From positions 490,127 to 528,031 of the forward strand of contig NW_005434617.1 in NCBI RefSeq assembly GCF_000315625.1: DNA of 37,905 bases, written 5' to 3'. A program made the translations under genes and the position numbers. Positions 85-37,902 of this stretch are shown here, piece after piece; the stretch's first letter is position 1, and each line of letters begins with the position of its first letter. The notes under the pieces were generated by a model. That model saw only the letters and a list, made by a program, of their open reading frames with translations. It did not search any database and was not told where the DNA came from. The DNA comes from Guillardia theta CCMP2712. Lineage: Eukaryota; Protista; Cryptophyta.

Positions 85-795
85 ATGGACCTCTTGCCGA
101 AGATCAACACAGTCGATATCCGCCGACTCTGTGGGGTGAGACGAGGAGAGAGGAAGACGAGGAGAGAGGGAGACGAGGAGAGAGGAAGACGAGGAGAGAG
201 GGAGACGAGGAGAGAGGAAGATGAGGAGAGAGGGAGACGAGGAGAGAGGGAGACGAGGAGAGAGGAAGATGAGGAGAGAGGGAGACGAGGAGAGAGGAAG
301 ACGAGGAGAGAGGGAGACGAGGAGAGAGGAAGACGAGGAGAGAGGGAGACGAGGAGAGAGGAAGACGGAGGAGAGAGGGAGACGAGGAGAGGAGAGGTGG
401 TAGGAAGACGAGCGGTGGAGATGCTGGAGGGCGAGGGCGAGGGCGAGGGTGAGGGTGAGGGTGAGGGCGAGGGCGGGGAGGAGGAGAGGAAAAGGTTGGG
501 GGATGAGGAAAAAATTGATACTCGTGCACAGGATCAGATCAAGATCAAGAAGAAAGGTGCGGACGTGGGCAGCGCAGACCAGAGGGCGGAGGAAGCAGGT
601 TCCTCTCGAGCTCTGTGAAATTGCCAGCTGACGACGAGCTGCAGCTCAGAAGGAGATCAAGAAAGGAGACAAGGTGAGCTGAGAGGCCTCGTACTCGCCC
701 AGCTGACGGTCCAGCTGTAGGACGTTTCGGACGCCAAGTCAAGGTTCCTGGAGAGGAAGCGAATGCGCGAGGAGAAGTTGGCGCAGATGAAGTAG
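85..795 (+). CDS. Probable small spliced gene or 3' part of a gene; basic/charged C-terminus (…KEIKKGDK|DVSDAKSRFLERKRMREEKLAQMK*), function unknown
   Basis: GT..AG-bounded short exons between ~530 and 795 with TAG at 793-795. The C-terminal 'VSDAKSRFLERKR' loosely resembles the tail of NSRP1/CCDC55-type nuclear proteins (weak recall only). The 85..618 ORF mostly translates a tandem repeat that is probably intronic. Confidence 0.3.
140..385. repeat. 16-bp purine-rich minisatellite GA(C/T)GAGGAGAGAGG(A/G)A, about 15 copies
   Basis: Directly visible tandem array; the A/G variant mostly alternates, giving a 32-bp higher-order period. Confidence 0.95.
427..474. repeat. (GAGGGY)n hexamer microsatellite
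   Basis: gagggc/gagggt tandem copies. Confidence 0.9.
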
Positions 796-8776: not shown

Positions 8777-8781
8777 GGGAG
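8777..8781 (+). repeat. Left target-site duplication GGGAG
   Basis: Identical 5-mer at 17338-17342 directly after the other LTR; 5 bp is the usual copia TSD length. Confidence 0.8.
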
Positions 8782-9208
8782 TAATCGAATCAACCTCCAC
8801 CTCACTGGCCAGAATCTATTTAACCCAAGATCCACCAAAGACTAACTCTCAGTACACCTGAGATCCTTACACCAACCTTATTCACCTCAACGATACACAG
8901 CTGTGCAGTCTCCAACACCTTCACTGATGATGATAGAACTCTCAGAAGAACCACACAACACCACCAACACTTCCTTTATTCACAGCAGTCACCTTCCCTT
9001 CAGTCCCTTGCAACCAAGTACAATGCACAGCGCGCCGTCGACACGTGTCCTCCTAACCCCCTCTTCTCCGCCTGACCCTCAGGCTCGTCGATTCCTTAAT
9101 TCCAGACCTATGTCGAAACCCACTTCCATCTCGCTGAGCTTCGTCCATCGATGAGACGCAATACCCTGAACTTCTCGCCGTCTCCAAGAACTTATCCGAG
9201 TTCTTACA
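8782..9208 (-). repeat. 3' LTR (427 bp; TGTAAG…CGATTA on element strand)
   Basis: Base-for-base identical on visual comparison to 16911-17337 (constant offset 8129). AATAAA on the element strand at 8975-8980. Confidence 0.95.
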
Positions 9209-9216
9209 CCCTCCCT
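9209..9216 (-). promoter_or_regulatory. Short polypurine tract (AGGGAGGG) abutting the 3' LTR
   Basis: Plus strand ccctccct immediately inside the LTR end, the canonical PPT position. Confidence 0.75.
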
Positions 9217-10531
9217 GACGAAGTTAAGCGAGATTCTCAGCTTCCTTTTCCACTTCATCCTTCATCCTCTGGGAACCCCCTTTTTAAACATCTCCCTGCT
9301 CCTCCTCCAAGCTGCACCACCGCGCTCTCCTCCTCCAAGCTGCCTGCTCTTTCCTGGATCCCAATCTCTGCTGATCAAGCTTCCTTCTCCTCCATCAAGC
9401 TTCCTTCTCCTCCGTCCGAGCTGCTCCCTGCGTGTTCTTGAATCGCAATCTCCTCTTCCATGCTCCAAGCTCCTCCCTGCACCCAGATCCTCCTGCATCC
9501 AGATCCTCCTCCATGCTCCAAGCTGCTTCTTGCTCAGGCTCCTAGATCCTTCTCCATCCATCTTTTACCTACACACTCTCTTTCATAGAAACCTCGTCAG
9601 TACCTTCAACACTCCTCCACCACCTGAACTCGACTGTGCCGCACTGCACTTGTTCGTCAGGCTTCCCCTCTGATCAGTCAGGCTCCCCAGACACCTTTCT
9701 GATCATCTAGTCATCCATCCCATCATTGTGCTTCAAATCCCATCGATTTCAATTGTCACCCATCTGACTTTCTCAATCCAAATTTTCCACCCAATGATGT
9801 CCACCATTCATGACCAATGTGTTTGTCCTAACTATCCTGCTCTACGGGCCCTTCTAACAAATCGCTATCTAACCGCGGTATGAATGATTTGGCGCCATGT
9901 CACCTGAGAGCTCTTGAGATTTCATTTGCATGCATTTTCATTTCAATTCTCATATTGACCATATGATCTTCTTTCATTTGCCTTTCCCATCAATCATCTC
10001 TTCATTTTGAATTTTTTCAATTTCTCAACGGCCGATTTTTCATCAATTTCAATTCTCATTTCAATTCTTGCGATCATAGGTCTTGTATCTTGCGATCATG
10101 ATGGAAGGCTTCACATCCTAACCTGCTTGACTTGACCTAGAGTTCCTTGAACAGTCTTCGGGAGAAGAAGCTTGATACCACGCCACGCCAATCATCTGAT
10201 TCTACTTCTCAATATCAAACCTTCCTGCCAAGGTTCTCCCTCCCTGAATCAGAGATTGGTGTAGGCGATTGCTCGTTGATACCAGCTGTACGATGAACCC
10301 CATTGTATTCAAGCTGGGATGAATCCCACTGAAGTTCAAAGTTGCTCCCAAAGCGCTGTCTCCAGGCAGTCTCTACAACTACAGTCAGCACACAGTTGCG
10401 ACAGAAATCATACTGCTTTGATTCTGTAGAAAATCTTTCCCCCCATGTCCTGCAACTGCGCCTCCCATGGCTGACTTCACTCCACTCAACCAGCATGAAC
10501 TCCACCCTTCGCGTACTACATGTCAAGATGC

Positions 10532-13500
10532 TCACAGAATGCCATCGTTCTCATTAGGATGAAAGTCATCACTGCAGCATACCCCTTGAGCGTTGAAATC
10601 TTCTCCAAATAGAAACGAACCAATTGCTTTCCACCTCGTAAACGGCAGAATTTTCGTGAACAGGTCCGCAGGCTGAAACTTAGTAGGAACTTTCACAGGA
10701 AGTAATTCTCCCTCATCCACCATGAGAACAGCAAACTTAGCACGTAAGTCGATGTGCTTCAGTCTAGAATATGCTCGTTTCTCGGTCAACAAACGAATAC
10801 ACGGCTCATTATCCAGCAGGAGCATCGTCGGACGTTGCTGGCAAAACCCTAACTGTTGAAGTAAGCTTCGATACATCTTGATATGCTTGGCGACTACCGA
10901 TGTCGCATAGATTTCTGCCTCTGACGATGAAAGTGATATGACTTTCTGCGTTTTCGAACCATATGAAATAACTCCTCCGTTCATTACGATAGCCCATCCG
11001 GACTGACTTCGTCGCGTCAAGACATCCGTCCCCCAGTCACTATCACTCGCAGCTACGAGTTCATTGTGAAACACCTCCTGATTAACAGATACACCTCTCT
11101 GATGGTAAACAATACAAATATCTCTCGTCGTGTACAGATACCTCGCCAAGTGAACCAATGCATCCCAGTCACGCACTCTGGGTGCCCGTGCAAATCTGCT
11201 TAAGAGACTGACCGCGAATGAAATATCAGCTCTTGTCCCATTAGCAACGTACAAGATTGTTCCAAGAAGAGCCTGATATTGTCTCACCGAGAACTTATCC
11301 AACAATTCTCCCTCTAGATGATAACTCCGCATGTACACTCCAGGCAAGATAGTAAACACTGAACGAAGAGCTATTCCAAATTTCTCAACCAGCTGTTCAA
11401 TAAAATGCTTCTGACTCAAGGTAATAGTTCCTTTCGTCAAATCTTGGTGAACACGAATACCCAGGAATGTACCTGTAGCTTCACTTCCAGAAAAGTCGAA
11501 TACCTTGCTCAAGCAGTCCAAAAAATAATTACAGACTTCTTGATTCTCACATACCAGAAGAAGATCATCCACCCACGTCGTGATGAGAATTCTTGAGCCG
11601 TTGTGTTCATATCTGTAAATGATTTCATCATGTCCCACAGGTTCCGCGCCCAGACGCAGGAATTCTCGAGACAGCTTTTCCCACCATCGTCGCGGAGCCG
11701 TTCGCGTCCCATATATCGCTTTGGTTACTTTGAGCAAAACATTCGGAGGCAAAGCCATGATGTCAGGCGGTATCATGAACATCGGTTCGTTCAATTCACT
11801 GTATAGGAACGCGGCCGCGATATCTCGGAAGGCGATAATCCATCCATTTCCTGCCGCTATGCTGAGTAACAACCGAATGTTATCCATCGACGTCGTCGGC
11901 GCAAACAACTCCTCGGACGTGGGTAAAAGATTGCCCATCACAACCAACCTTGCTTTTCTCTTCAGAATGTTGCCATGTAAATCTCTCTTTGAGGAATAAA
12001 CCCACATCGCCCTCGCAAGAATTTTACCTCGAGTTTCATCAGACCTCGGGACCACTTCCCAAACTCGCCTTTCTTCCATCTTTTGAATCTCAGCTCGTTC
12101 AGCTGCCTCCCACAATTCTCTATCCTTGTGCAACAACATCTCCCTTCGATTGCGAGGATCTGCCGTCGAACTCGAGTCTTGTACTGATGGCGGAGCTCGC
12201 GACAGAAATGCTGCAGAGAGTTTGACAGCTTCCCATACAGGAACAACTAGCGCCATGTTGGTGACAAGCATACGAGAGTCTGGAAAACATTGTGTCAAGT
12301 CACTTGTACCAAGATCAATACAGTCTGGATCACGAGCAACATCAATGTCATCCCCTGGCTCCATGAGTGGGACCACATCATTCCACCGTTCCCGTCTCAA
12401 AGGTATCCATCGTGCAGAGTGCTGAGAAGTAGTCGAACGATTACCCTCGTCCAATACGAACAGTACCTCTTTTCCATCGCCGTTGAGCACCTTTCCAGGT
12501 ACCAGCTGAGATGACAGAGGAGACTTCCTGTGCATAAGAAAGACATCGGGATTTCCTCGAACTGTCTTTTCCACCAGCTGCGAAAGGATGTTATCCCCCT
12601 TTTGAGGAAACGCTCGAAAGTAATAATCGTTACACCCTGTCAACTCGAAGACATTCTTCGGCAAAACTCCTGATTGTAGCTCATCCCCAGGCAACAACTC
12701 AGATGTCTCTGCCTCCGACATAGCAATCATGGTAACTTCCTTCCCCATAGACAAAATCCGTACGTTCTCACTGTCCGGATGGATTAATATCCAGTACTTG
12801 TCGTCAAACGTAACACGCACCAAGAATGTATCGTCTTTGAAGACAACTTGAGTAATCGTCCCCGTTCGAACCTTCCCATCATCCATTACAACTTCAGCCC
12901 GCCTGTTGATGAAGCGGTTTTCGGCATCCCGTCTCTGCTTACGAAAGTCTCGTCTGGTACGACATGTTTTGGTCGACGACGCTGCCTCTGTATCCGTATG
13001 ATCCGCATCCTCTCGGCCACCGTCAACCATCACTGTAGGCACATAATCTTCATCGCTGTCCTGGCACACCATCTCAGCAGCCCTTACCCCCTCATCATCC
13101 GACTCCAGTGAATGATCCTCCAACCGTGTTCTCTTTCGACGACCACTAGTCCCAGCATTCACTGCCTCTGACCGTTCATCTTCAACACCCTTGACAGGCG
13201 AATCATCCTCCATGTCAATATCGTGCTTTACCACCACTTCAGGATCCTCTTGCCAATTCATCCGTCCCGCACGTCGAAATGGAAAGAAGAATTCATCACA
13301 GGTCAGATTATTCGTGTGATAGATTTTGTTGTCGTCAACACACCATACCAAGTAGCCAATGGTATGCCCAGGAAAAGCGTTTGCATTTCCGAGCATAATG
13401 CCCTGTTTAGCTGGATCTTCAATCTTCGAACTGCGTACATTATTCTTGAAGAATGTCATACACCCAAAGGTCTTGAGAGATTTGAAGTCGAAAACATCTC

Positions 13501-16500
13501 CATTATAGATTGTATACGGAGAAAGATTGCCGAAATTCCTGAAACTCGGGAGAGCATTGTACAAGTACGTAGCCTGCATAACAGAAAATTCCCATTTTTC
13601 GATAGGCAAAGCACTCTGTTTGAGCAAAGTTCTGTGGATAGTACTGACTGCTCGAATTCCTCTCTCAGCCAGCGAATTGTAAACTTGACTGTAATCAGGA
13701 ATCCGATCCCACTTCAAACCCGTCTCACGAACGAATGCCTCCAACTCTGAAGAAGAAAACTCACTGCCGTTATCAGATATGATGCGTTGAACTCCGTTTC
13801 TCTTGACACTTTTCTCCTCCTGTCGAAGTAACTCCATCAGAATATCACTCGTTTGACTCTTGGACTTCATGGGACGCACAATCAGGTATCCTGAAAAAGC
13901 GTCGACAACTATAAGAAAGTAACGATAGCCCGATGGTTCAGAGACTGCCACCATATCTTTCAAGTCTACGTACCACAGAGCATTTACATCTCCAACACGT
14001 TCCTGTCGAAATGAGGTTTGTTTGTGAACAGGGCGTGACACAAATTTCGAAATCCTACACACGTGACACGGAGAATGAATCAACCGCCTATTGAACGTGA
14101 TGTATTTGACCGTATCCGCGAGCAACTTCTGTACTCGACAATCAGGGTGCCCCGTTTTCATGTGCCACAGAACCGCATCAGATAGACTCTGTGTTGACTT
14201 CCCATCGAAAGAAGGTCCAGGAGTGACATGTGCTTTAGTCAAACAAACTGTTCCAGCCTCCGCTGAAACACAAAAGATTGGCACATCACCTGCCACAGAA
14301 TCATGCCTCGGACCTCTGGTTGTCAACAAATACAACTTGTCCCGCTGAATCAGAGGAATCCTGATCTTGCCATCCTCCGAAGCCACATAGGATTTGACCG
14401 TGTTCTTCGACCCCCGTCCAACAATGTAATACTTGGATCCCAGAAAATCATCCAGACTCACAAGTGGTACAGGAAGGACAGGACAAACTCGAACATTCTC
14501 CAATACTATATTGTCCGACTCACCATCTGCACCGACAATTTGCAAATTTAGCTTGCCATACTTGGTACAATTAATCTTTCCTCCTGCCGTCATGACAAAG
14601 AAATCGTCTCCCGATTGTACGTCTGAGAGGAGGGATTCGTCCCCAACCATGGTAACATTTGCACCCGAATCAAGCAAAAAATTGACAACCCTTCCGTCAC
14701 CGTCTCCCACCATACTCTGCATTGCCATTCCTTGAATATCAGTCATCGACATCGTTGAATCAATGCCAAACTGAAACGCAAAGAAGGATCGCCATTCCGC
14801 CTGACGGCGACCTGCCTGAGCATTGCTTTCTGAAACATTTTGCTGTACCGTCCTCTCAAAAGGATTGTCCGACACCGGACTACGGCCACGTCCCCGATGG
14901 TTAGGCTCAAACGTCTCCTGCCATGGTCCAACCGGCTGCTCACCGTCTGCACCTGACCTCCTTCCCCCCTGGATTTCCCTGGCCAAGCGCAGTACCGCCT
15001 CGCCGAGAGCCTGAGGAGAAAATTCATGCACATTGTTTCGCCGCTCATGATATCCTCCCGAACGATCACCTCTTGAGAAACCATCAGACTCGCCTCTGCG
15101 TGGATTGTAGTTATGCGTCGTCCAATGCTCCCCTCTACCTCGTCCGCGCATCCCTCTACCAGCCGGACGATCATACGGCTTCCCCCGCTGCTGATGATGA
15201 CCTCGAAATCCTGAGCCTCTTCCCCGAAAATTATTCCCTTGAAAACCACCGGCTCTTCCTTGGTGATTTCGAAAATCATTCGATCCAGCACCAGCGGAGC
15301 CTCCACGACCGTAGCCGCCACGAGACCCATCAACATGGTAGGCGCCCCTGCGCCGCATTCCCTGACCCGGAGGCTCACCTCGGCCTCGCGTACTCTCCCT
15401 CGCGTCCAACGTGCTTCCATCCTCCTGACTGCCAGATGCATTATCCACAGGCGACGACTCATTGCTGCCTCTCGAGTCTCCCTTTTCCTTACCACCCTGT
15501 CCTCCACTTTCAGACGCCTTGTCTGCATTCGGTTGACTGACCGTAGCTTGCACCTCCGAGGCTGCCACATTAACTGACGCAGTGCCCGACTGTGTTTTCT
15601 CACCCCCAGCAGTAAAAAATACCTGTTCATCATGCAAATTCACAGCCCAAGAGTACACCTCCTCCCAAGTCAATTCGGTTGACAACTTGGACCGCTTATT
15701 CAAGCGCGCGACATCTCGAATATCAATACAATCTGAAACATAACATTGCTTGATCAGCTCCTCCACCAAAATCATTTCCAAGGCTTTCACTGATTCCTCT
15801 CCCGCTACATCTTCCAACTTGTTAAGCAGGATCTTCATCTGGACCATAACGCTGTGGAAGGTAGATATGTCAGGCAATTTCGACTTTGCCAGCGTCAGAA
15901 GCTCCATCCGCGTTTTATCCGGAGTGGCATTGAGATTCCCACTGCGCTTTCTGACTTCCCATATCATATACGCCAGAGCTTTGATCGGAGCCAACTTGGA
16001 CTTGAATCCTCCTGACATAGCCCATGGAACAGGAAATAATGGCTTCAGATAGGATCGAAAGTATTGGCCAAGCTCCAGGAGAAAATATTCAACGTCTTCA
16101 TATAACGCGTTAATCATCGCGGCATCCATCTCCTTGCCATCAGAATCCCTTCGGCTTACCCCCTTCTTTTTCTTCTTGCCACTCTGAGAAGCACTCACTG
16201 GGTTGCCGGAATCACCGTCATCAACAGGACTACCATACTGATCCGACACCGTCTTGGACAAATTTTGCAACTGCTCCACATAATCTCGAATCTGCCCGCT
16301 CTTCCTCCAACAAAATTTGGCATTCAGGAAAAGCAAAACGACCTGCCTTTTCCATTCCTCCGTCAACTCGCCATCCACATTCACACTCTTGTTCTTTTCC
16401 CATACAGTATGAAACTCACCACCAAAATTACCGAGTTGATCGAGTGGAAACTCTCGTATCAGCGGGAAAAGACACAAGCCCAATCCTGTCCGATAACGAT

Positions 16501-16639
16501 TCATTGCATTCTGAATCGGAAGCAAAAGTTCATCCAATTCCTCCTGTGACGTCACCGATCCTTTGAGGAATGTGTCCATCTGTAACTCAGGATGAGTCTT
16601 GATCAATTCTTCACTGAGGTCCAATTTTCCTCCTCCCAT
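10532..16639 (-). CDS. Copia Gag-Pol polyprotein, 2035 aa (Gag, RGG-rich NC, aspartic protease, GAG-pre-integrase, integrase, RT, RNase H)
   Basis: PR FLLDSGAN (~14670); HHCC LWHMKTGH…CHVC (~14060-14170); IN core WYVDL…ISDNGSEF…AERGIR (~13660-13975); RT KRKARLVVMG, DIAAAFL, KAIYG, WVDD (~11560-12000); RNase H SDSDWG…SSSEAE…DN…KHIDLR…ADLFTK (~10650-11050). Confidence 0.97.
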   Translation of the reverse strand: MGGGKLDLSEELIKTHPELQMDTFLKGSVTSQEELDELLLPIQNAMNRYRTGLGLCLFPLIREFPLDQLGNFGGEFHTVWEKNKSVNVDGELTEEWKRQVVLLFLNAKFCWRKSGQIRDYVEQLQNLSKTVSDQYGSPVDDGDSGNPVSASQSGKKKKKGVSRRDSDGKEMDAAMINALYEDVEYFLLELGQYFRSYLKPLFPVPWAMSGGFKSKLAPIKALAYMIWEVRKRSGNLNATPDKTRMELLTLAKSKLPDISTFHSVMVQMKILLNKLEDVAGEESVKALEMILVEELIKQCYVSDCIDIRDVARLNKRSKLSTELTWEEVYSWAVNLHDEQVFFTAGGEKTQSGTASVNVAASEVQATVSQPNADKASESGGQGGKEKGDSRGSNESSPVDNASGSQEDGSTLDARESTRGRGEPPGQGMRRRGAYHVDGSRGGYGRGGSAGAGSNDFRNHQGRAGGFQGNNFRGRGSGFRGHHQQRGKPYDRPAGRGMRGRGRGEHWTTHNYNPRRGESDGFSRGDRSGGYHERRNNVHEFSPQALGEAVLRLAREIQGGRRSGADGEQPVGPWQETFEPNHRGRGRSPVSDNPFERTVQQNVSESNAQAGRRQAEWRSFFAFQFGIDSTMSMTDIQGMAMQSMVGDGDGRVVNFLLDSGANVTMVGDESLLSDVQSGDDFFVMTAGGKINCTKYGKLNLQIVGADGESDNIVLENVRVCPVLPVPLVSLDDFLGSKYYIVGRGSKNTVKSYVASEDGKIRIPLIQRDKLYLLTTRGPRHDSVAGDVPIFCVSAEAGTVCLTKAHVTPGPSFDGKSTQSLSDAVLWHMKTGHPDCRVQKLLADTVKYITFNRRLIHSPCHVCRISKFVSRPVHKQTSFRQERVGDVNALWYVDLKDMVAVSEPSGYRYFLIVVDAFSGYLIVRPMKSKSQTSDILMELLRQEEKSVKRNGVQRIISDNGSEFSSSELEAFVRETGLKWDRIPDYSQVYNSLAERGIRAVSTIHRTLLKQSALPIEKWEFSVMQATYLYNALPSFRNFGNLSPYTIYNGDVFDFKSLKTFGCMTFFKNNVRSSKIEDPAKQGIMLGNANAFPGHTIGYLVWCVDDNKIYHTNNLTCDEFFFPFRRAGRMNWQEDPEVVVKHDIDMEDDSPVKGVEDERSEAVNAGTSGRRKRTRLEDHSLESDDEGVRAAEMVCQDSDEDYVPTVMVDGGREDADHTDTEAASSTKTCRTRRDFRKQRRDAENRFINRRAEVVMDDGKVRTGTITQVVFKDDTFLVRVTFDDKYWILIHPDSENVRILSMGKEVTMIAMSEAETSELLPGDELQSGVLPKNVFELTGCNDYYFRAFPQKGDNILSQLVEKTVRGNPDVFLMHRKSPLSSQLVPGKVLNGDGKEVLFVLDEGNRSTTSQHSARWIPLRRERWNDVVPLMEPGDDIDVARDPDCIDLGTSDLTQCFPDSRMLVTNMALVVPVWEAVKLSAAFLSRAPPSVQDSSSTADPRNRREMLLHKDRELWEAAERAEIQKMEERRVWEVVPRSDETRGKILARAMWVYSSKRDLHGNILKRKARLVVMGNLLPTSEELFAPTTSMDNIRLLLSIAAGNGWIIAFRDIAAAFLYSELNEPMFMIPPDIMALPPNVLLKVTKAIYGTRTAPRRWWEKLSREFLRLGAEPVGHDEIIYRYEHNGSRILITTWVDDLLLVCENQEVCNYFLDCLSKVFDFSGSEATGTFLGIRVHQDLTKGTITLSQKHFIEQLVEKFGIALRSVFTILPGVYMRSYHLEGELLDKFSVRQYQALLGTILYVANGTRADISFAVSLLSRFARAPRVRDWDALVHLARYLYTTRDICIVYHQRGVSVNQEVFHNELVAASDSDWGTDVLTRRSQSGWAIVMNGGVISYGSKTQKVISLSSSEAEIYATSVVAKHIKMYRSLLQQLGFCQQRPTMLLLDNEPCIRLLTEKRAYSRLKHIDLRAKFAVLMVDEGELLPVKVPTKFQPADLFTKILPFTRWKAIGSFLFGEDFNAQGVCCSDDFHPNENDGIL

Positions 16640-16887
16640 GGTAAAAGCAATGTCGAAAAATCAGTAGCAACGTTCCACACAAGAATCGACTCCGACCTTC
16701 CAAACTGAGCTTCCAAGCACAAGCGTAAAAAATGCAAAAAATCGAGTCCAACTTCCAAACAACGATTCCAAACAATCGAATCACCGACTCAAATAGCAAC
16801 AATGAACCGAACTTACTCTTTGTTCCAGTTCAGACCGTACGGTAAATCACAGTTGCGCAACAACAGTAAAAAAAATGAGAACTGAGA

Positions 16888-16911
16888 ACAAAGAGAAAAT
16901 TTTCTCTTTGT
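16888..16911. other. Perfect 24-bp palindrome ACAAAGAGAAAATTTTCTCTTTGT at the primer-binding-site position
   Basis: The sequence equals its own reverse complement and overlaps the last 3 nt of the 5' LTR; no TGG-initiated tRNA complement follows the LTR. Confidence 0.9.
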
Positions 16912-17337
16912 AATCGAATCAACCTCCACCTCACTGGCCAGAATCTATTTAACCCAAGATCCACCAAAGACTAACTCTCAGTACACCTGAGATCCTTACA
17001 CCAACCTTATTCACCTCAACGATACACAGCTGTGCAGTCTCCAACACCTTCACTGATGATGATAGAACTCTCAGAAGAACCACACAACACCACCAACACT
17101 TCCTTTATTCACAGCAGTCACCTTCCCTTCAGTCCCTTGCAACCAAGTACAATGCACAGCGCGCCGTCGACACGTGTCCTCCTAACCCCCTCTTCTCCGC
17201 CTGACCCTCAGGCTCGTCGATTCCTTAATTCCAGACCTATGTCGAAACCCACTTCCATCTCGCTGAGCTTCGTCCATCGATGAGACGCAATACCCTGAAC
17301 TTCTCGCCGTCTCCAAGAACTTATCCGAGTTCTTACA
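16909..17337 (-). repeat. 5' LTR (TGTAA…TTACA, 429 bp if the inner CA is counted)
   Basis: Identical to the left LTR over 16911-17337; has 5-bp terminal inverted repeats TGTAA/TTACA. Confidence 0.95.
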
Positions 17338-17342
17338 GGGAG
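17338..17342 (+). repeat. Right target-site duplication GGGAG
   Basis: Matches 8777-8781. Confidence 0.8.
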
Positions 17343-17975
17343 GGCACGCCACTCAGCGGCACCACAGCGGCCAGGCTCAGCAGCACTAGGCGGCGGACCG
17401 TCTCCGTGTGCACCGTGGCGCGTCGCCGCTGGACTGTCTCACTGTCACGGTCTGTCTGCACCGGCGCAGCCGGCCGCCGCCCCGTGTCGGAGGCTCGGAG
17501 TCCCGGACGCCGCCGGGCGGCGCCGCCGGGGCCCCGGGGGCCCCGGCCGGGGGGGGCGGCCGCACACCCTCCGAGGCTCGCGCGGTGGCATTCAGGGCCG
17601 CCGGCCCCGGGCCCGGCAGGGCCCGGGCTGACAGTCGGATCGGACTCGCGGCGGGGCGGGGGCCGCTCACGCGGCCTAGGCATGTCGGATTGCACAGGCC
17701 GGGCTGCGGCCCTGCGGCGGCACTGCAGCGCCCAGAACGTCACAGTGACCGTTGAACTTCGCCGGAAGTTTCGGGCCGCACAGTGACCGGCCCGGGGGGG
17801 GTGAGTGACCGTAAAGCGGCTGGCCGCGGTCCCGGTACCGTACACTACCGTATCGGATCATCGGATCTGACGCCCCCGGTACTACGGCTAGTGAGGGTAC
17901 GGACTCCGGGAGCCGCTACCCGGCCGGGCGGGCCCGGTGTGGACCGGCCGCACGACCTGCCGAGGACAGCAGGCG
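17343..17975. other. Very GC/CpG-rich non-coding island (continues 8630-8781 on the other side of the insertion)
   Basis: Dense CCGG/GGCC runs and short palindromes; shares CGGATCGGACTCG (8735 / 17636) and AGGCTCGGAG (8666 / 17491) with the left flank. Confidence 0.75.
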
Positions 17976-37767: not shown

Positions 37768-37902
37768 GTTTAGTGTTTAGGGTTTAGGGTTTAGTAATGA
37801 GGGTTTATGGTTTAAGGTTTGTGGTTTAGAGCTAAGGGTTTAGGGTTTAGGGTTTAGGGTTTAGGGTTTAGGGTTTAGGGTTTAGGGTTAGGGTTAGGTT
37901 AG
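37768..37902 (+). repeat. Telomeric repeat array (TTTAGGG)n, degenerate proximally
   Basis: Variant units 37768-37838, 7 perfect TTTAGGG 37839-37887, then TTAGGG/TTAGG; G-rich strand points toward the window end. Confidence 0.9.

What the first reader, a model, noticed from the sequence alone, without database searches (positions are those of the whole stretch)
16888..16911. Copia element with a perfect hairpin instead of a tRNA primer-binding site: candidate fold-back self-priming
Seen: immediately inside the 5' LTR there is no TGG-initiated tRNA complement and no recognisable half-tRNA-iMet site. Instead the element strand reads …GATT-ACAAAGAGAAAATTTTCTCTTTGT, a perfect 24-nt palindrome covering the LTR's terminal CA. 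Known: Ty1/copia elements prime with a tRNA 3' end or a tRNA fragment (copia, Ty5), while self-priming is described for the gypsy-type Tf1 group via pairing of the RNA 5' end with the PBS. I find no long complement of this site within the LTR, so Tf1-type pairing does not explain it. Inference: the RNA hairpin, if cut just 3' of …CUUUG, would offer a 3'-OH paired next to U5 and prime minus-strand DNA starting at …GATTA, which is exactly where the integrated 3' LTR ends. The element has identical LTRs and an intact ORF, so whatever primes it worked recently.
Basis: partly seen in the sequence, partly recalled or inferred. Interest (0 to 1): 0.85.

Follow-up and report, generated by a model that had tools for sequence, protein, structure and literature searches.

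The report
Palindrome replaces copia primer-binding site
A young, transcribed copia retrotransposon of the alga Guillardia theta has a perfect palindrome where a tRNA primer should bind, so it probably starts reverse transcription from its own RNA, much as already noted, but never explained, for fungal GalEa copia elements.

Summary
The window is from Guillardia theta. It holds an intact Ty1/copia element on the minus strand (8782-17337), with identical 427-nt LTRs, a 5-bp target duplication and a 2035-aa ORF.

Twelve independent 3'/solo LTR ends and three target duplications fix the LTR end at ...GATTA (TG...TA, not TG...CA). The next base opens a perfect 22-nt core palindrome, which reaches 24 nt with one flanking pair. 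It is the only palindrome with arms of 8 nt or more in the window.

There is no tRNA 3'-end site, no half-tRNA-iMet site, and no Tf1-type complement in the LTR.

A second family (RT about 60% identical) has the same core at the same place. It differs by one G-C to A-U double change, and its palindrome extends to 30 nt. All 25 genomic sites are perfectly complementary. Both families also carry a downstream copy of the 5' arm that can capture the 3' arm.

Priming across an RNA dimer fits equally well.

This is not a first. Fungal GalEa copia elements have a 'conserved hairpin site' with the same layout (PMC5445492), and this scan has reported the same feature on other copies in this genome. I class it as a new variant of a known, mechanistically unsolved kind.

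The parts
16911..17337 (-). 5' LTR, 427 nt, TGTAAG...GATTCGATTA (TG...TA)
   Evidence: Identical to the 3' LTR. Boundaries fixed by the target duplication and by 12 other LTR ends.
17338..17342 (-). Target-site duplication CTCCC, upstream copy
16889..16910 (-). 22-nt core palindrome CAAAGAGAAAA|TTTTCTCTTTG, starting at the first base after the LTR. 5' arm (S1) 16900-16910 is the PBS position; 3' arm (S2) 16889-16899 is the proposed primer.
16888..16911 (-). Extended 24-nt perfect palindrome, which adds the LTR's last A paired to the T after the core. The predicted cut lies between 16889 and 16888 on the element strand (inference).
   Evidence: The cut site is inferred from the LTR end.
16879..16895 (-). 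S2-extended segment CTCTTTGTTC-T-CAGTTC, which can pair with the downstream S3 segment instead of S1
   Evidence: Minimum-free-energy folds.
16816..16831 (-). S3: GAACTG-GAACAAAGAG, a downstream partial copy of the 5' arm. It forms a 10+6 bp alternative helix with S2-extended.
   Evidence: Family B has the equivalent GAATACAAAAAGA, a 13-bp stem.
16801..16942 (-). Conserved island: last 31 nt of U5, the palindrome, and the leader through S3
   Evidence: 141/142 and 140/142 identical between subfamilies that are only 59-93% identical on either side.
10535..16639 (-). Gag-Pol ORF, 2035 aa, in the order protease, integrase, RT, RNase H
   Evidence: A 99% identical protein from Guillardia theta is held in UniRef and MMETSP.
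9209..9216 (-). Polypurine tract AGGGAGGG, abutting the 3' LTR
   Evidence: The same TCAGGGAGGG precedes five other 3' LTRs.
8782..9208 (-). 3' LTR, 427 nt
8777..8781 (-). Target-site duplication CTCCC, downstream copy

Best explanation
The palindrome is the element's primer site, and it does not use a tRNA.

Proposed mechanism:
- In the genomic RNA, the 3' arm (UUUUCUCUUUG) pairs with the 5' arm (CAAAGAGAAAA), which starts at the first base after U5. The 3' arm may be on the same RNA folded back, or on the co-packaged partner RNA in a 22-24 bp duplex.
- A cut just 3' of the closing G leaves a 3'-OH opposite C(+1).
- RT extends this 3'-OH, so the first base made is the complement of the LTR's last A.
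- When plus-strand strong-stop DNA copies the RNA primer, the 5' arm is rewritten from the 3' arm. That would keep the palindrome perfect and turn any change in one arm into a 'compensatory' pair.
- The downstream copy of the 5' arm (S3) competes for the 3' arm. It is likely a switch between a translated or closed state and a priming or dimer state.

Shown here: the anatomy, the exact boundary, conservation with one double change, absence of tRNA-type and Tf1-type sites, and transcription.

Inferred: that the 3' arm is the primer, the cut site, the cis or trans choice, the copy-back step and the switch.
For: - The LTR end is fixed at ...TTA by 12 ends and 3 target duplications, and the core C...G starts at the next base in both families.
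- All 13 family-A sites and 12 family-B sites in the genome are perfectly Watson-Crick, with no G-U pair, no mixed form, and a control count of 0.
- A and B differ by one G-C to A-U double change and by no one-sided change in the 11 core pairs. S3 carries the same change.
- The palindrome sits in a 142-nt island that is 99% conserved between subfamilies about 60% identical outside it.
- The LTR has no complement of 7 nt or more to the 5' arm.
- Two outgroup copia elements carry the half-tRNA-iMet site GTTATGAGCCC at this position, and this element does not.
- No tRNA link was found in partial tests, and there is no Rfam match.
- Predicted energies are -10.9 kcal/mol for the hairpin and -32.6 for the homodimer.
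- The family is abundant in probable RNA assemblies in which the flanking DNA has zero depth, and it is present in MMETSP.
- Fungal GalEa elements show the same layout (PMC5445492).
Against: - No molecule was observed. Only assembled contigs were available, so no RNA 3' end, no RNA-DNA junction and no strand-change joint at the palindrome could be seen.
- Covariation is a single event between two lineages, and shuffles reach the score in 82 of 500 trials.
- The conserved island could owe something to recombination between co-packaged RNAs rather than to selection alone.
- A cut 3' of the hairpin severs the template from its coding part, so the model needs a second RNA or an intermolecular first jump.
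- No nuclease is identified for a cut in an RNA-RNA duplex.
- The host tRNA set was only partly screened: the 63 best nuclear genes and the first 100 of 538 pattern hits. Organellar and nucleomorph tRNAs and other small RNAs were not screened at all.
Confidence: 0.5

Rival explanations
1. The palindrome is mainly a dimer-linkage or packaging signal, as with palindromes in or beside retroviral PBS regions. The true primer would be an unidentified host RNA that anneals to the 5' arm.
For: A perfect palindrome favours an intermolecular duplex: -32.6 kcal/mol against 2 x -10.9 for two hairpins. It lies in a conserved leader block typical of packaging regions. A host primer ending ...UUUUCUUUUUG could serve family B perfectly and family A with one G-U pair. 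The tRNA and small-RNA screen was incomplete.
Against: A dimer signal need not begin exactly at U5+1 in two families. A host primer would rewrite the site towards one sequence, yet A keeps G-C and B keeps A-U in all copies, with both arms and S3 changing together. No tRNA link was found. No other candidate PBS lies next to U5.
Confidence: 0.25
2. Initiation without a nucleic-acid primer. RT would start de novo or from a protein hydroxyl at the hairpin, as in the Mauriceville plasmid RT or hepadnavirus epsilon.
For: A conserved hairpin sits at the start site and no primer has been identified.
Against: The polyprotein shows only standard copia domains. The perfect Watson-Crick arms with no G-U pair, and the exact abutment to U5, point to base-paired priming and copying rather than a mere recognition structure. 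No precedent exists in LTR elements (established knowledge).
Confidence: 0.06
3. Tf1/TAR-type self-priming. The first bases of the transcript would fold back onto the 5' arm and be cut off as primer.
For: This is the only self-priming mechanism so far demonstrated. It is predicted for the plant TAR copia lineage (PMC6317226).
Against: The 427-nt LTR holds no complement of 7 nt or more, even allowing G-U, to the 5' arm. Only the pyrimidine-rich 3' arm finds G-U-rich partners. GalEa authors report the same absence.
Confidence: 0.03
4. Chance palindrome, a one-off template-switch scar, or an assembly artefact.
For: None beyond the prior; AT-rich palindromes do occur in metagenomes.
Against: 0 of 200 simulated windows reached arm 12. 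The palindrome is present in 25 genomic sites in two families, in an independent ENA contig, and in contigs of four public runs.
Confidence: 0.01

Closest known systems
[quoted passage not shown] 2017, PMC5445492)
   Same: Copia element with no tRNA PBS. A palindrome lies directly after the 5' LTR and includes the LTR's final A. A second segment downstream is complementary to it (CHSeq2, matching S3 here). No complement lies in U5, so the Tf1 model fails. TGT at the LTR start, 5-bp target duplication, single large ORF. The mechanism is unknown there too.
   Different: The GalEa palindrome is 10 nt (A+CTGATCAGT or CTAATTAGT) with a conserved A/A mismatch to CHSeq2. Here the core is 22 nt (24-30 nt in all), AT-rich and perfect. 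GalEa LTRs end in CA, these end in TA. The host is a cryptophyte, not a fungus. Clade membership was not tested. The outgroups retrieved here use half-tRNA-iMet.
Tf1/sushi-type self-priming (Lin and Levin 1997), also predicted for the plant TAR copia lineage (PMC6317226)
   Same: Priming is tRNA-independent and uses the element's own RNA. The primer is made by a cut in an RNA-RNA duplex at the PBS.
   Different: In Tf1 the primer is the first 11 nt of the transcript, upstream of the PBS, and the PBS is not palindromic. Here no upstream complement exists, and the only partner lies immediately downstream or on the partner RNA.
Half-tRNA-iMet priming of copia, Ty5 and Osser-type elements (hemivirus type)
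   Same: Same superfamily and the same position of the site. Two outgroup relatives found here (L072, L078) have GTTATGAGCCC right after the LTR.
   Different: The motif is absent here, and the site is self-complementary and unrelated to tRNA-iMet.
Palindromic dimer-initiation sites in or near retroviral PBS regions (for example MMTV, PMC8096270)
   Same: A self-complementary sequence in the 5' leader that can pair two genomic RNAs.
   Different: In retroviruses the palindrome accompanies a normal tRNA PBS and usually sits in a loop. Here it occupies the PBS position itself and no other PBS is present.

Membership tests
Ty1/copia (Pseudoviridae) LTR retrotransposon | Pol domain order protease, integrase, RT, RNase H, with an RVT_2-type RT | tested here: met
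   Pfam hits: Pol_BBD 654-731, rve 886-983, SH3_retrovirus 1050-1120, RVT_2 1526-1757. Motifs: DSGA, HHCC, WVDD, ADLFTK.
Ty1/copia (Pseudoviridae) LTR retrotransposon | LTRs with a 5-bp target-site duplication | tested here: met
   CTCCC, AAGAT and CTCGG at three insertions.
Ty1/copia (Pseudoviridae) LTR retrotransposon | Canonical LTR termini 5'-TG...CA-3' | tested here: not met
   Termini are TG...TA in family A (12 ends) and in family B (...CCAATA). The CA lies two bases beyond the integrated end.
tRNA 3'-end primed LTR elements | PBS starting TGG within 0-3 nt of the LTR and complementary to a tRNA 3' end | tested here: not met
   The sequence after the LTR is CAAAGAGAAAATT..., and the first TGG lies about 83 nt downstream.
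Half-tRNA primed copia elements (copia, Ty5, Osser) | PBS complementary to the anticodon arm of tRNA-iMet (TTATGAGCCC type) or of another tRNA | tested here: not met
   The motif is present in outgroups L072 and L078 and absent here. The 8-mer plus T-loop pattern was not above control. The 10-mer sites listed do not overlap the 63 best tRNA genes. The screen is incomplete.
Tf1/sushi or TAR-type self-priming | The start of the transcript (inside the LTR) is complementary to the PBS | tested here: not met
   No complement of 7 nt or more to the 5' arm anywhere in the LTR, G-U pairs allowed.
GalEa-type Conserved Hairpin Site | No tRNA PBS, and a palindrome directly after the 5' LTR that includes the LTR's final A | tested here: met
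   compared with the description in PMC5445492.
GalEa-type Conserved Hairpin Site | A second inverse-complementary segment (CHSeq2) 12-41 bp downstream | tested here: inconclusive
   In family B, S3 lies 10 nt after the 3' arm. In family A it lies about 54-65 nt after it. Both can pair with the 3' arm.
GalEa-type Conserved Hairpin Site | CHSeq1 consensus CTGATCAGT or CTAATTAGT with a conserved A/A mismatch to CHSeq2, and an LTR ending in CA | tested here: not met
   The core is CAAAGAGAAAATTTTCTCTTTG, the pairing is perfect and the LTR ends in TA.
GalEa clade of copia elements | RT/RNase H groups phylogenetically with named GalEa elements | not tested
   No labelled GalEa sequence was available. 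The one fungal relative retrieved (L078) proved to be a half-tRNA-iMet element.

The most novel reading that the evidence does not exclude
These elements use a priming mode not demonstrated for any retroelement. The primer would be the RNA segment immediately downstream of the primer site, on the same RNA or on the dimer partner, released by a cut inside an RNA-RNA duplex. Each replication cycle would copy the primer back into the site, which would explain why the palindromes stay perfect. The same solution would then have arisen, or been kept, in fungal GalEa and cryptophyte copia elements.
Probability: 0.4. Interest if true: 0.8.

Novelty: new variant of a known kind. Interest (0 to 1): 0.6.

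Why it matters
How reverse transcription starts is a defining step of every retroelement. Only tRNA, half-tRNA and Tf1-type priming have been worked out. The hairpin-site copia elements described in fungi in 2017 remain unexplained.

Guillardia theta offers a cleaner case:
- The palindrome is much longer and perfect.
- The U5 boundary is fixed to the base.
- Two families differ by a paired change.
- The copies are young, intact and transcribed, in an alga that can be cultured.

That makes the question testable by mapping the RNA attached to strong-stop cDNA. There is also a practical point: annotation pipelines that require a tRNA PBS will miss or misclassify such elements.

Tried and rejected
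- **Sister copies without the palindrome.** L023-L027 have an 83-88% similar LTR followed by GCCGGGGGTGTTCGGCC. They share homologous sequence on both sides of the LTR and 137-bp tandem units downstream. They are an old solo LTR inside a larger repeat, not a sister retrotransposon.
- **Third copia lineage of G. theta.** It is 45-47% identical in RT and its gag lies at C251:60156-61262, C4:1229220-1230278 and C146:84788-85891. I did not try to read it by other means.
- **Relatives outside the genome.** P0045 (45% identical) lies on a 4.4-kb contig without an LTR. P0046 and P0051 are not on record. L073-L076 gave no usable LTR junction.
- **Reads.** Only Logan contigs were available. They show presence and probable transcription, but no RNA ends and no fold-back joints.
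- **Rfam.** Nothing near threshold in 16500-17400.
- **Whole-leader folds.** They are no more stable than shuffles, z = -1.2 and -0.2. The case rests on the local helices and their conservation, not on global folding energy.

Full report
**1. What is there**

The window is G000:C57:490127-528031 of an 87.1-Mb, 669-contig genome. A protein 99% identical to the element's RT region is recorded from Guillardia theta in UniRef and MMETSP, so the host is this cryptophyte alga.

The element lies on the minus strand.
- The repeat finder reports only 300 nt of LTR. Direct extension shows 428 identical bases.
- The last matching base is a chance match, because it is also the first base of the target duplication. 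The LTRs are therefore 427 nt: 17337..16911 and 9208..8782.
- They read TGTAAG...GATTCGATTA and are flanked by CTCCC on both sides.
- A polypurine tract AGGGAGGG abuts the 3' LTR.
- The 2035-aa ORF (16639..10535) has no stop and shows the copia domain order Pol_BBD, rve, SH3, RVT_2.
- It carries DSGA, HHCC, WVDD and ADLFTK motifs.

**2. The boundary**

Twelve other 3' or solo LTRs of the family in the genome all end ...GATTCGATTA. The next base varies: C, G, C, T, A, A, A, A, G, T, G, C. Three insertions have clean 5-bp duplications, CTCCC, AAGAT and CTCGG.

So the integrated LTR ends in TA, not CA. The first internal base is the C that opens CAAAGAGAAAA|TTTTCTCTTTG (16910..16889).

It is the only palindrome with arms of 8 nt or more in the window. 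None of 200 Markov-1 simulated windows reached arm 12.

**3. What it is not**

- No TGG follows the LTR.
- The half-tRNA-iMet site GTTATGAGCCC sits right after the LTR in two outgroup copia elements that I retrieved: L072 from a metagenome and L078 from Gaeumannomyces. It is absent here.
- The LTR contains no complement of 7 nt or more to the 5' arm, even with G-U pairs. Only the pyrimidine-rich 3' arm finds G-U-rich partners. Tf1-type pairing is excluded.
- Rfam gives nothing.
- The 10-mer that a primer would need occurs 538 times in the genome. None of the 100 sites listed overlaps the 63 best-scoring tRNA genes.
- The 8-mers TCTCTTTG and TCTTTTTG within 30 nt upstream of a T-loop motif occur no more often than the reversed control, and none lies at a listed tRNA gene.
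- This tRNA test is partial. Organellar tRNAs, nucleomorph tRNAs and other small RNAs were not screened.

**4. Copies and relatives**

All family-A 5' LTR copies (L001-L010, L020, L029) carry the identical palindrome.

A second family, B, has these features.
- Its RT is 58-63% identical to A and its Gag 34%.
- Its LTR is 490 nt. It starts with the same TGTAAGAAC and ends ...GATTCCAATA.
- Right after that LTR it has CAAAAAGAAAA|TTTTCTTTTTG.
- The palindrome runs four bases into the LTR (AATA...TATT), giving 30 perfect bases.
- 3' and solo LTR matches of B stop at L061 position 240-244, which places the LTR end before the C.

A and B differ in the core by one G-C to A-U double change and by no one-sided change.

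Genome-wide, the pattern CAAANNGAAAATTTTCNNTTTG has 25 sites: 13 of type A and 12 of type B. None is mixed, and the reversed control gives 0. One further B copy has two mismatches.

The covariation is a single event between two lineages, and I do not overstate it. Shuffles reach the covariation score in 82 of 500 trials.

**5. A larger conserved unit and a competing helix**

Among A subfamilies, the last 31 nt of U5, the palindrome and the next 88 nt (window 16942..16801) are 141/142 and 140/142 identical. The sequence on either side is 59-93% identical. This points to selection. Recombination between co-packaged RNAs could also contribute.

Inside the block lies a partial second copy of the 5' arm, S3.
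- In family A, GAACTG-GAACAAAGAG (16831..16816) can pair with the 3' arm and its extension CTCTTTGTTC-T-CAGTTC (16895..16879). This gives 10+6 bp, and it is the predicted minimum-energy state of the leader.
- In family B, GAATACAAAAAGA lies 10 nt after the 3' arm and forms a 13-bp stem with it. S3 carries B's A where A has G.
- So the 3' arm has two mutually exclusive partners.

Predicted energies are -10.9 kcal/mol for the palindrome hairpin and -32.6 kcal/mol for the intermolecular duplex of two palindromes.

**6. Expression**

Logan contigs of three probable RNA runs cover the element and LTR at depths of hundreds to thousands, but show zero depth on the flanking DNA. A DNA run covers the flank at about 64.

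With the MMETSP protein, this supports transcription. Contigs cannot show RNA ends, and no strand-change joint at the palindrome was present in them.

**7. How it most likely works**

The one constant in both families is that U5 ends exactly one base before the C-G closing pair of the 22-nt core. A primer whose 3'-terminal G pairs with that C would make the complement of the LTR's last A the first base synthesised. After primer removal, it would produce exactly the observed integrated end, with no integrase trimming needed.

The only sequence known to end in that way is the element's own 3' arm.

The trans form avoids severing the template and is favoured energetically, but the sequence cannot decide between them.

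Copying the RNA primer during plus-strand strong-stop synthesis would rewrite the 5' arm from the 3' arm. That would explain the total absence of G-U pairs and mismatches in 25 sites.

All of this paragraph is inference. I put it at about 0.5.

The main rival (0.25) is a dimer or packaging palindrome combined with an unidentified host RNA primer.

**8. Comparison with what is known**

Donnart et al. 2017 (PMC5445492) described fungal GalEa copia elements with the following features.
- They have no PBS.
- A 9-bp sequence becomes palindromic when the LTR's final A is included.
- A second complementary sequence lies 12-41 bp downstream.
- No U5 complement exists.

They named this the Conserved Hairpin Site and could not fit it to any model. 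The layout here is the same in kind.

The differences are these.
- The palindrome is 22-30 nt against 10 nt.
- The pairing is perfect, with no conserved A/A mismatch.
- The LTR ends in TA, not CA.
- The host is different.

Membership of the GalEa clade was not tested. Neumann et al. 2019 (PMC6317226) predict Tf1-like self-priming for the plant TAR copia lineage.

Earlier notes of this scan describe the same feature on other copies in this genome: s1-439573, s1-434747 and s1-434714. My tests agree with them.

**9. Verdict**

The feature is real, conserved and functionally placed. The priming mechanism is unproven. I class it as a new variant of a known but unexplained kind, with interest 0.6.

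Noticed in passing
window 37768-37895: About 18 copies of GTTTAGG, a permutation of the plant-type telomere repeat TTTAGGG, at the very end of the window. This may be a chromosome end or an interstitial telomeric array.
   Followed up: no
window 138-391: A 16-bp tandem repeat GAGACGAGGAGAGAGG, 15.8 copies, 91% matches.
   Followed up: no
L023-L027 (G000 C46, C51, C31, C96): An old A-like solo LTR (83-88% identical) is embedded in a larger dispersed repeat. That repeat has homologous sequence upstream and arrays of about 137-bp tandem units downstream.
   Followed up: partly
L026 (G000:C31:507818-511296): The A-like LTR end ...GATTA is followed by GC and then directly by the start of a family-B LTR (TGTAAGAACTCAGG...). 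This is either a nested insertion or an LTR-LTR junction.
   Followed up: no
window 9217-10534: About 1.3 kb of non-coding sequence lies between the polyprotein stop and the polypurine tract, which is unusually long for a copia element.
   Followed up: no
window 10535-16639 (protein): The RT active site reads WVDD instead of YVDD. No CCHC zinc knuckle was found in Gag. At 2035 aa the polyprotein is about 500 aa longer than typical copia polyproteins. Another note of the scan (s1-450771) proposes Tudor-like domains after the integrase.
   Followed up: no
L001 / L012 (G000:C105:118768-127272): A copy 100% identical in the 5' LTR and leader has non-matching flanks (ATCGT upstream, GGCAT downstream). 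This suggests recombination between two insertions rather than a simple insertion.
   Followed up: no
window 16911 (LTR end), run X2: In a probable RNA assembly the LTR contig stops exactly at the LTR's last base. There a minor branch (depth 23, against 780 for the path into the palindrome) continues with a different letter. This may be read-through from 3' or solo LTRs, or another junction form.
   Followed up: no
L061 (ENA ERZ930071 contig, 7909 nt): A family-B variant from a metagenome assembly is 93% identical in the LTR and about 80% in the leader. It carries the identical 30-nt palindrome but two downstream copies of the S3 segment instead of one.
   Followed up: partly
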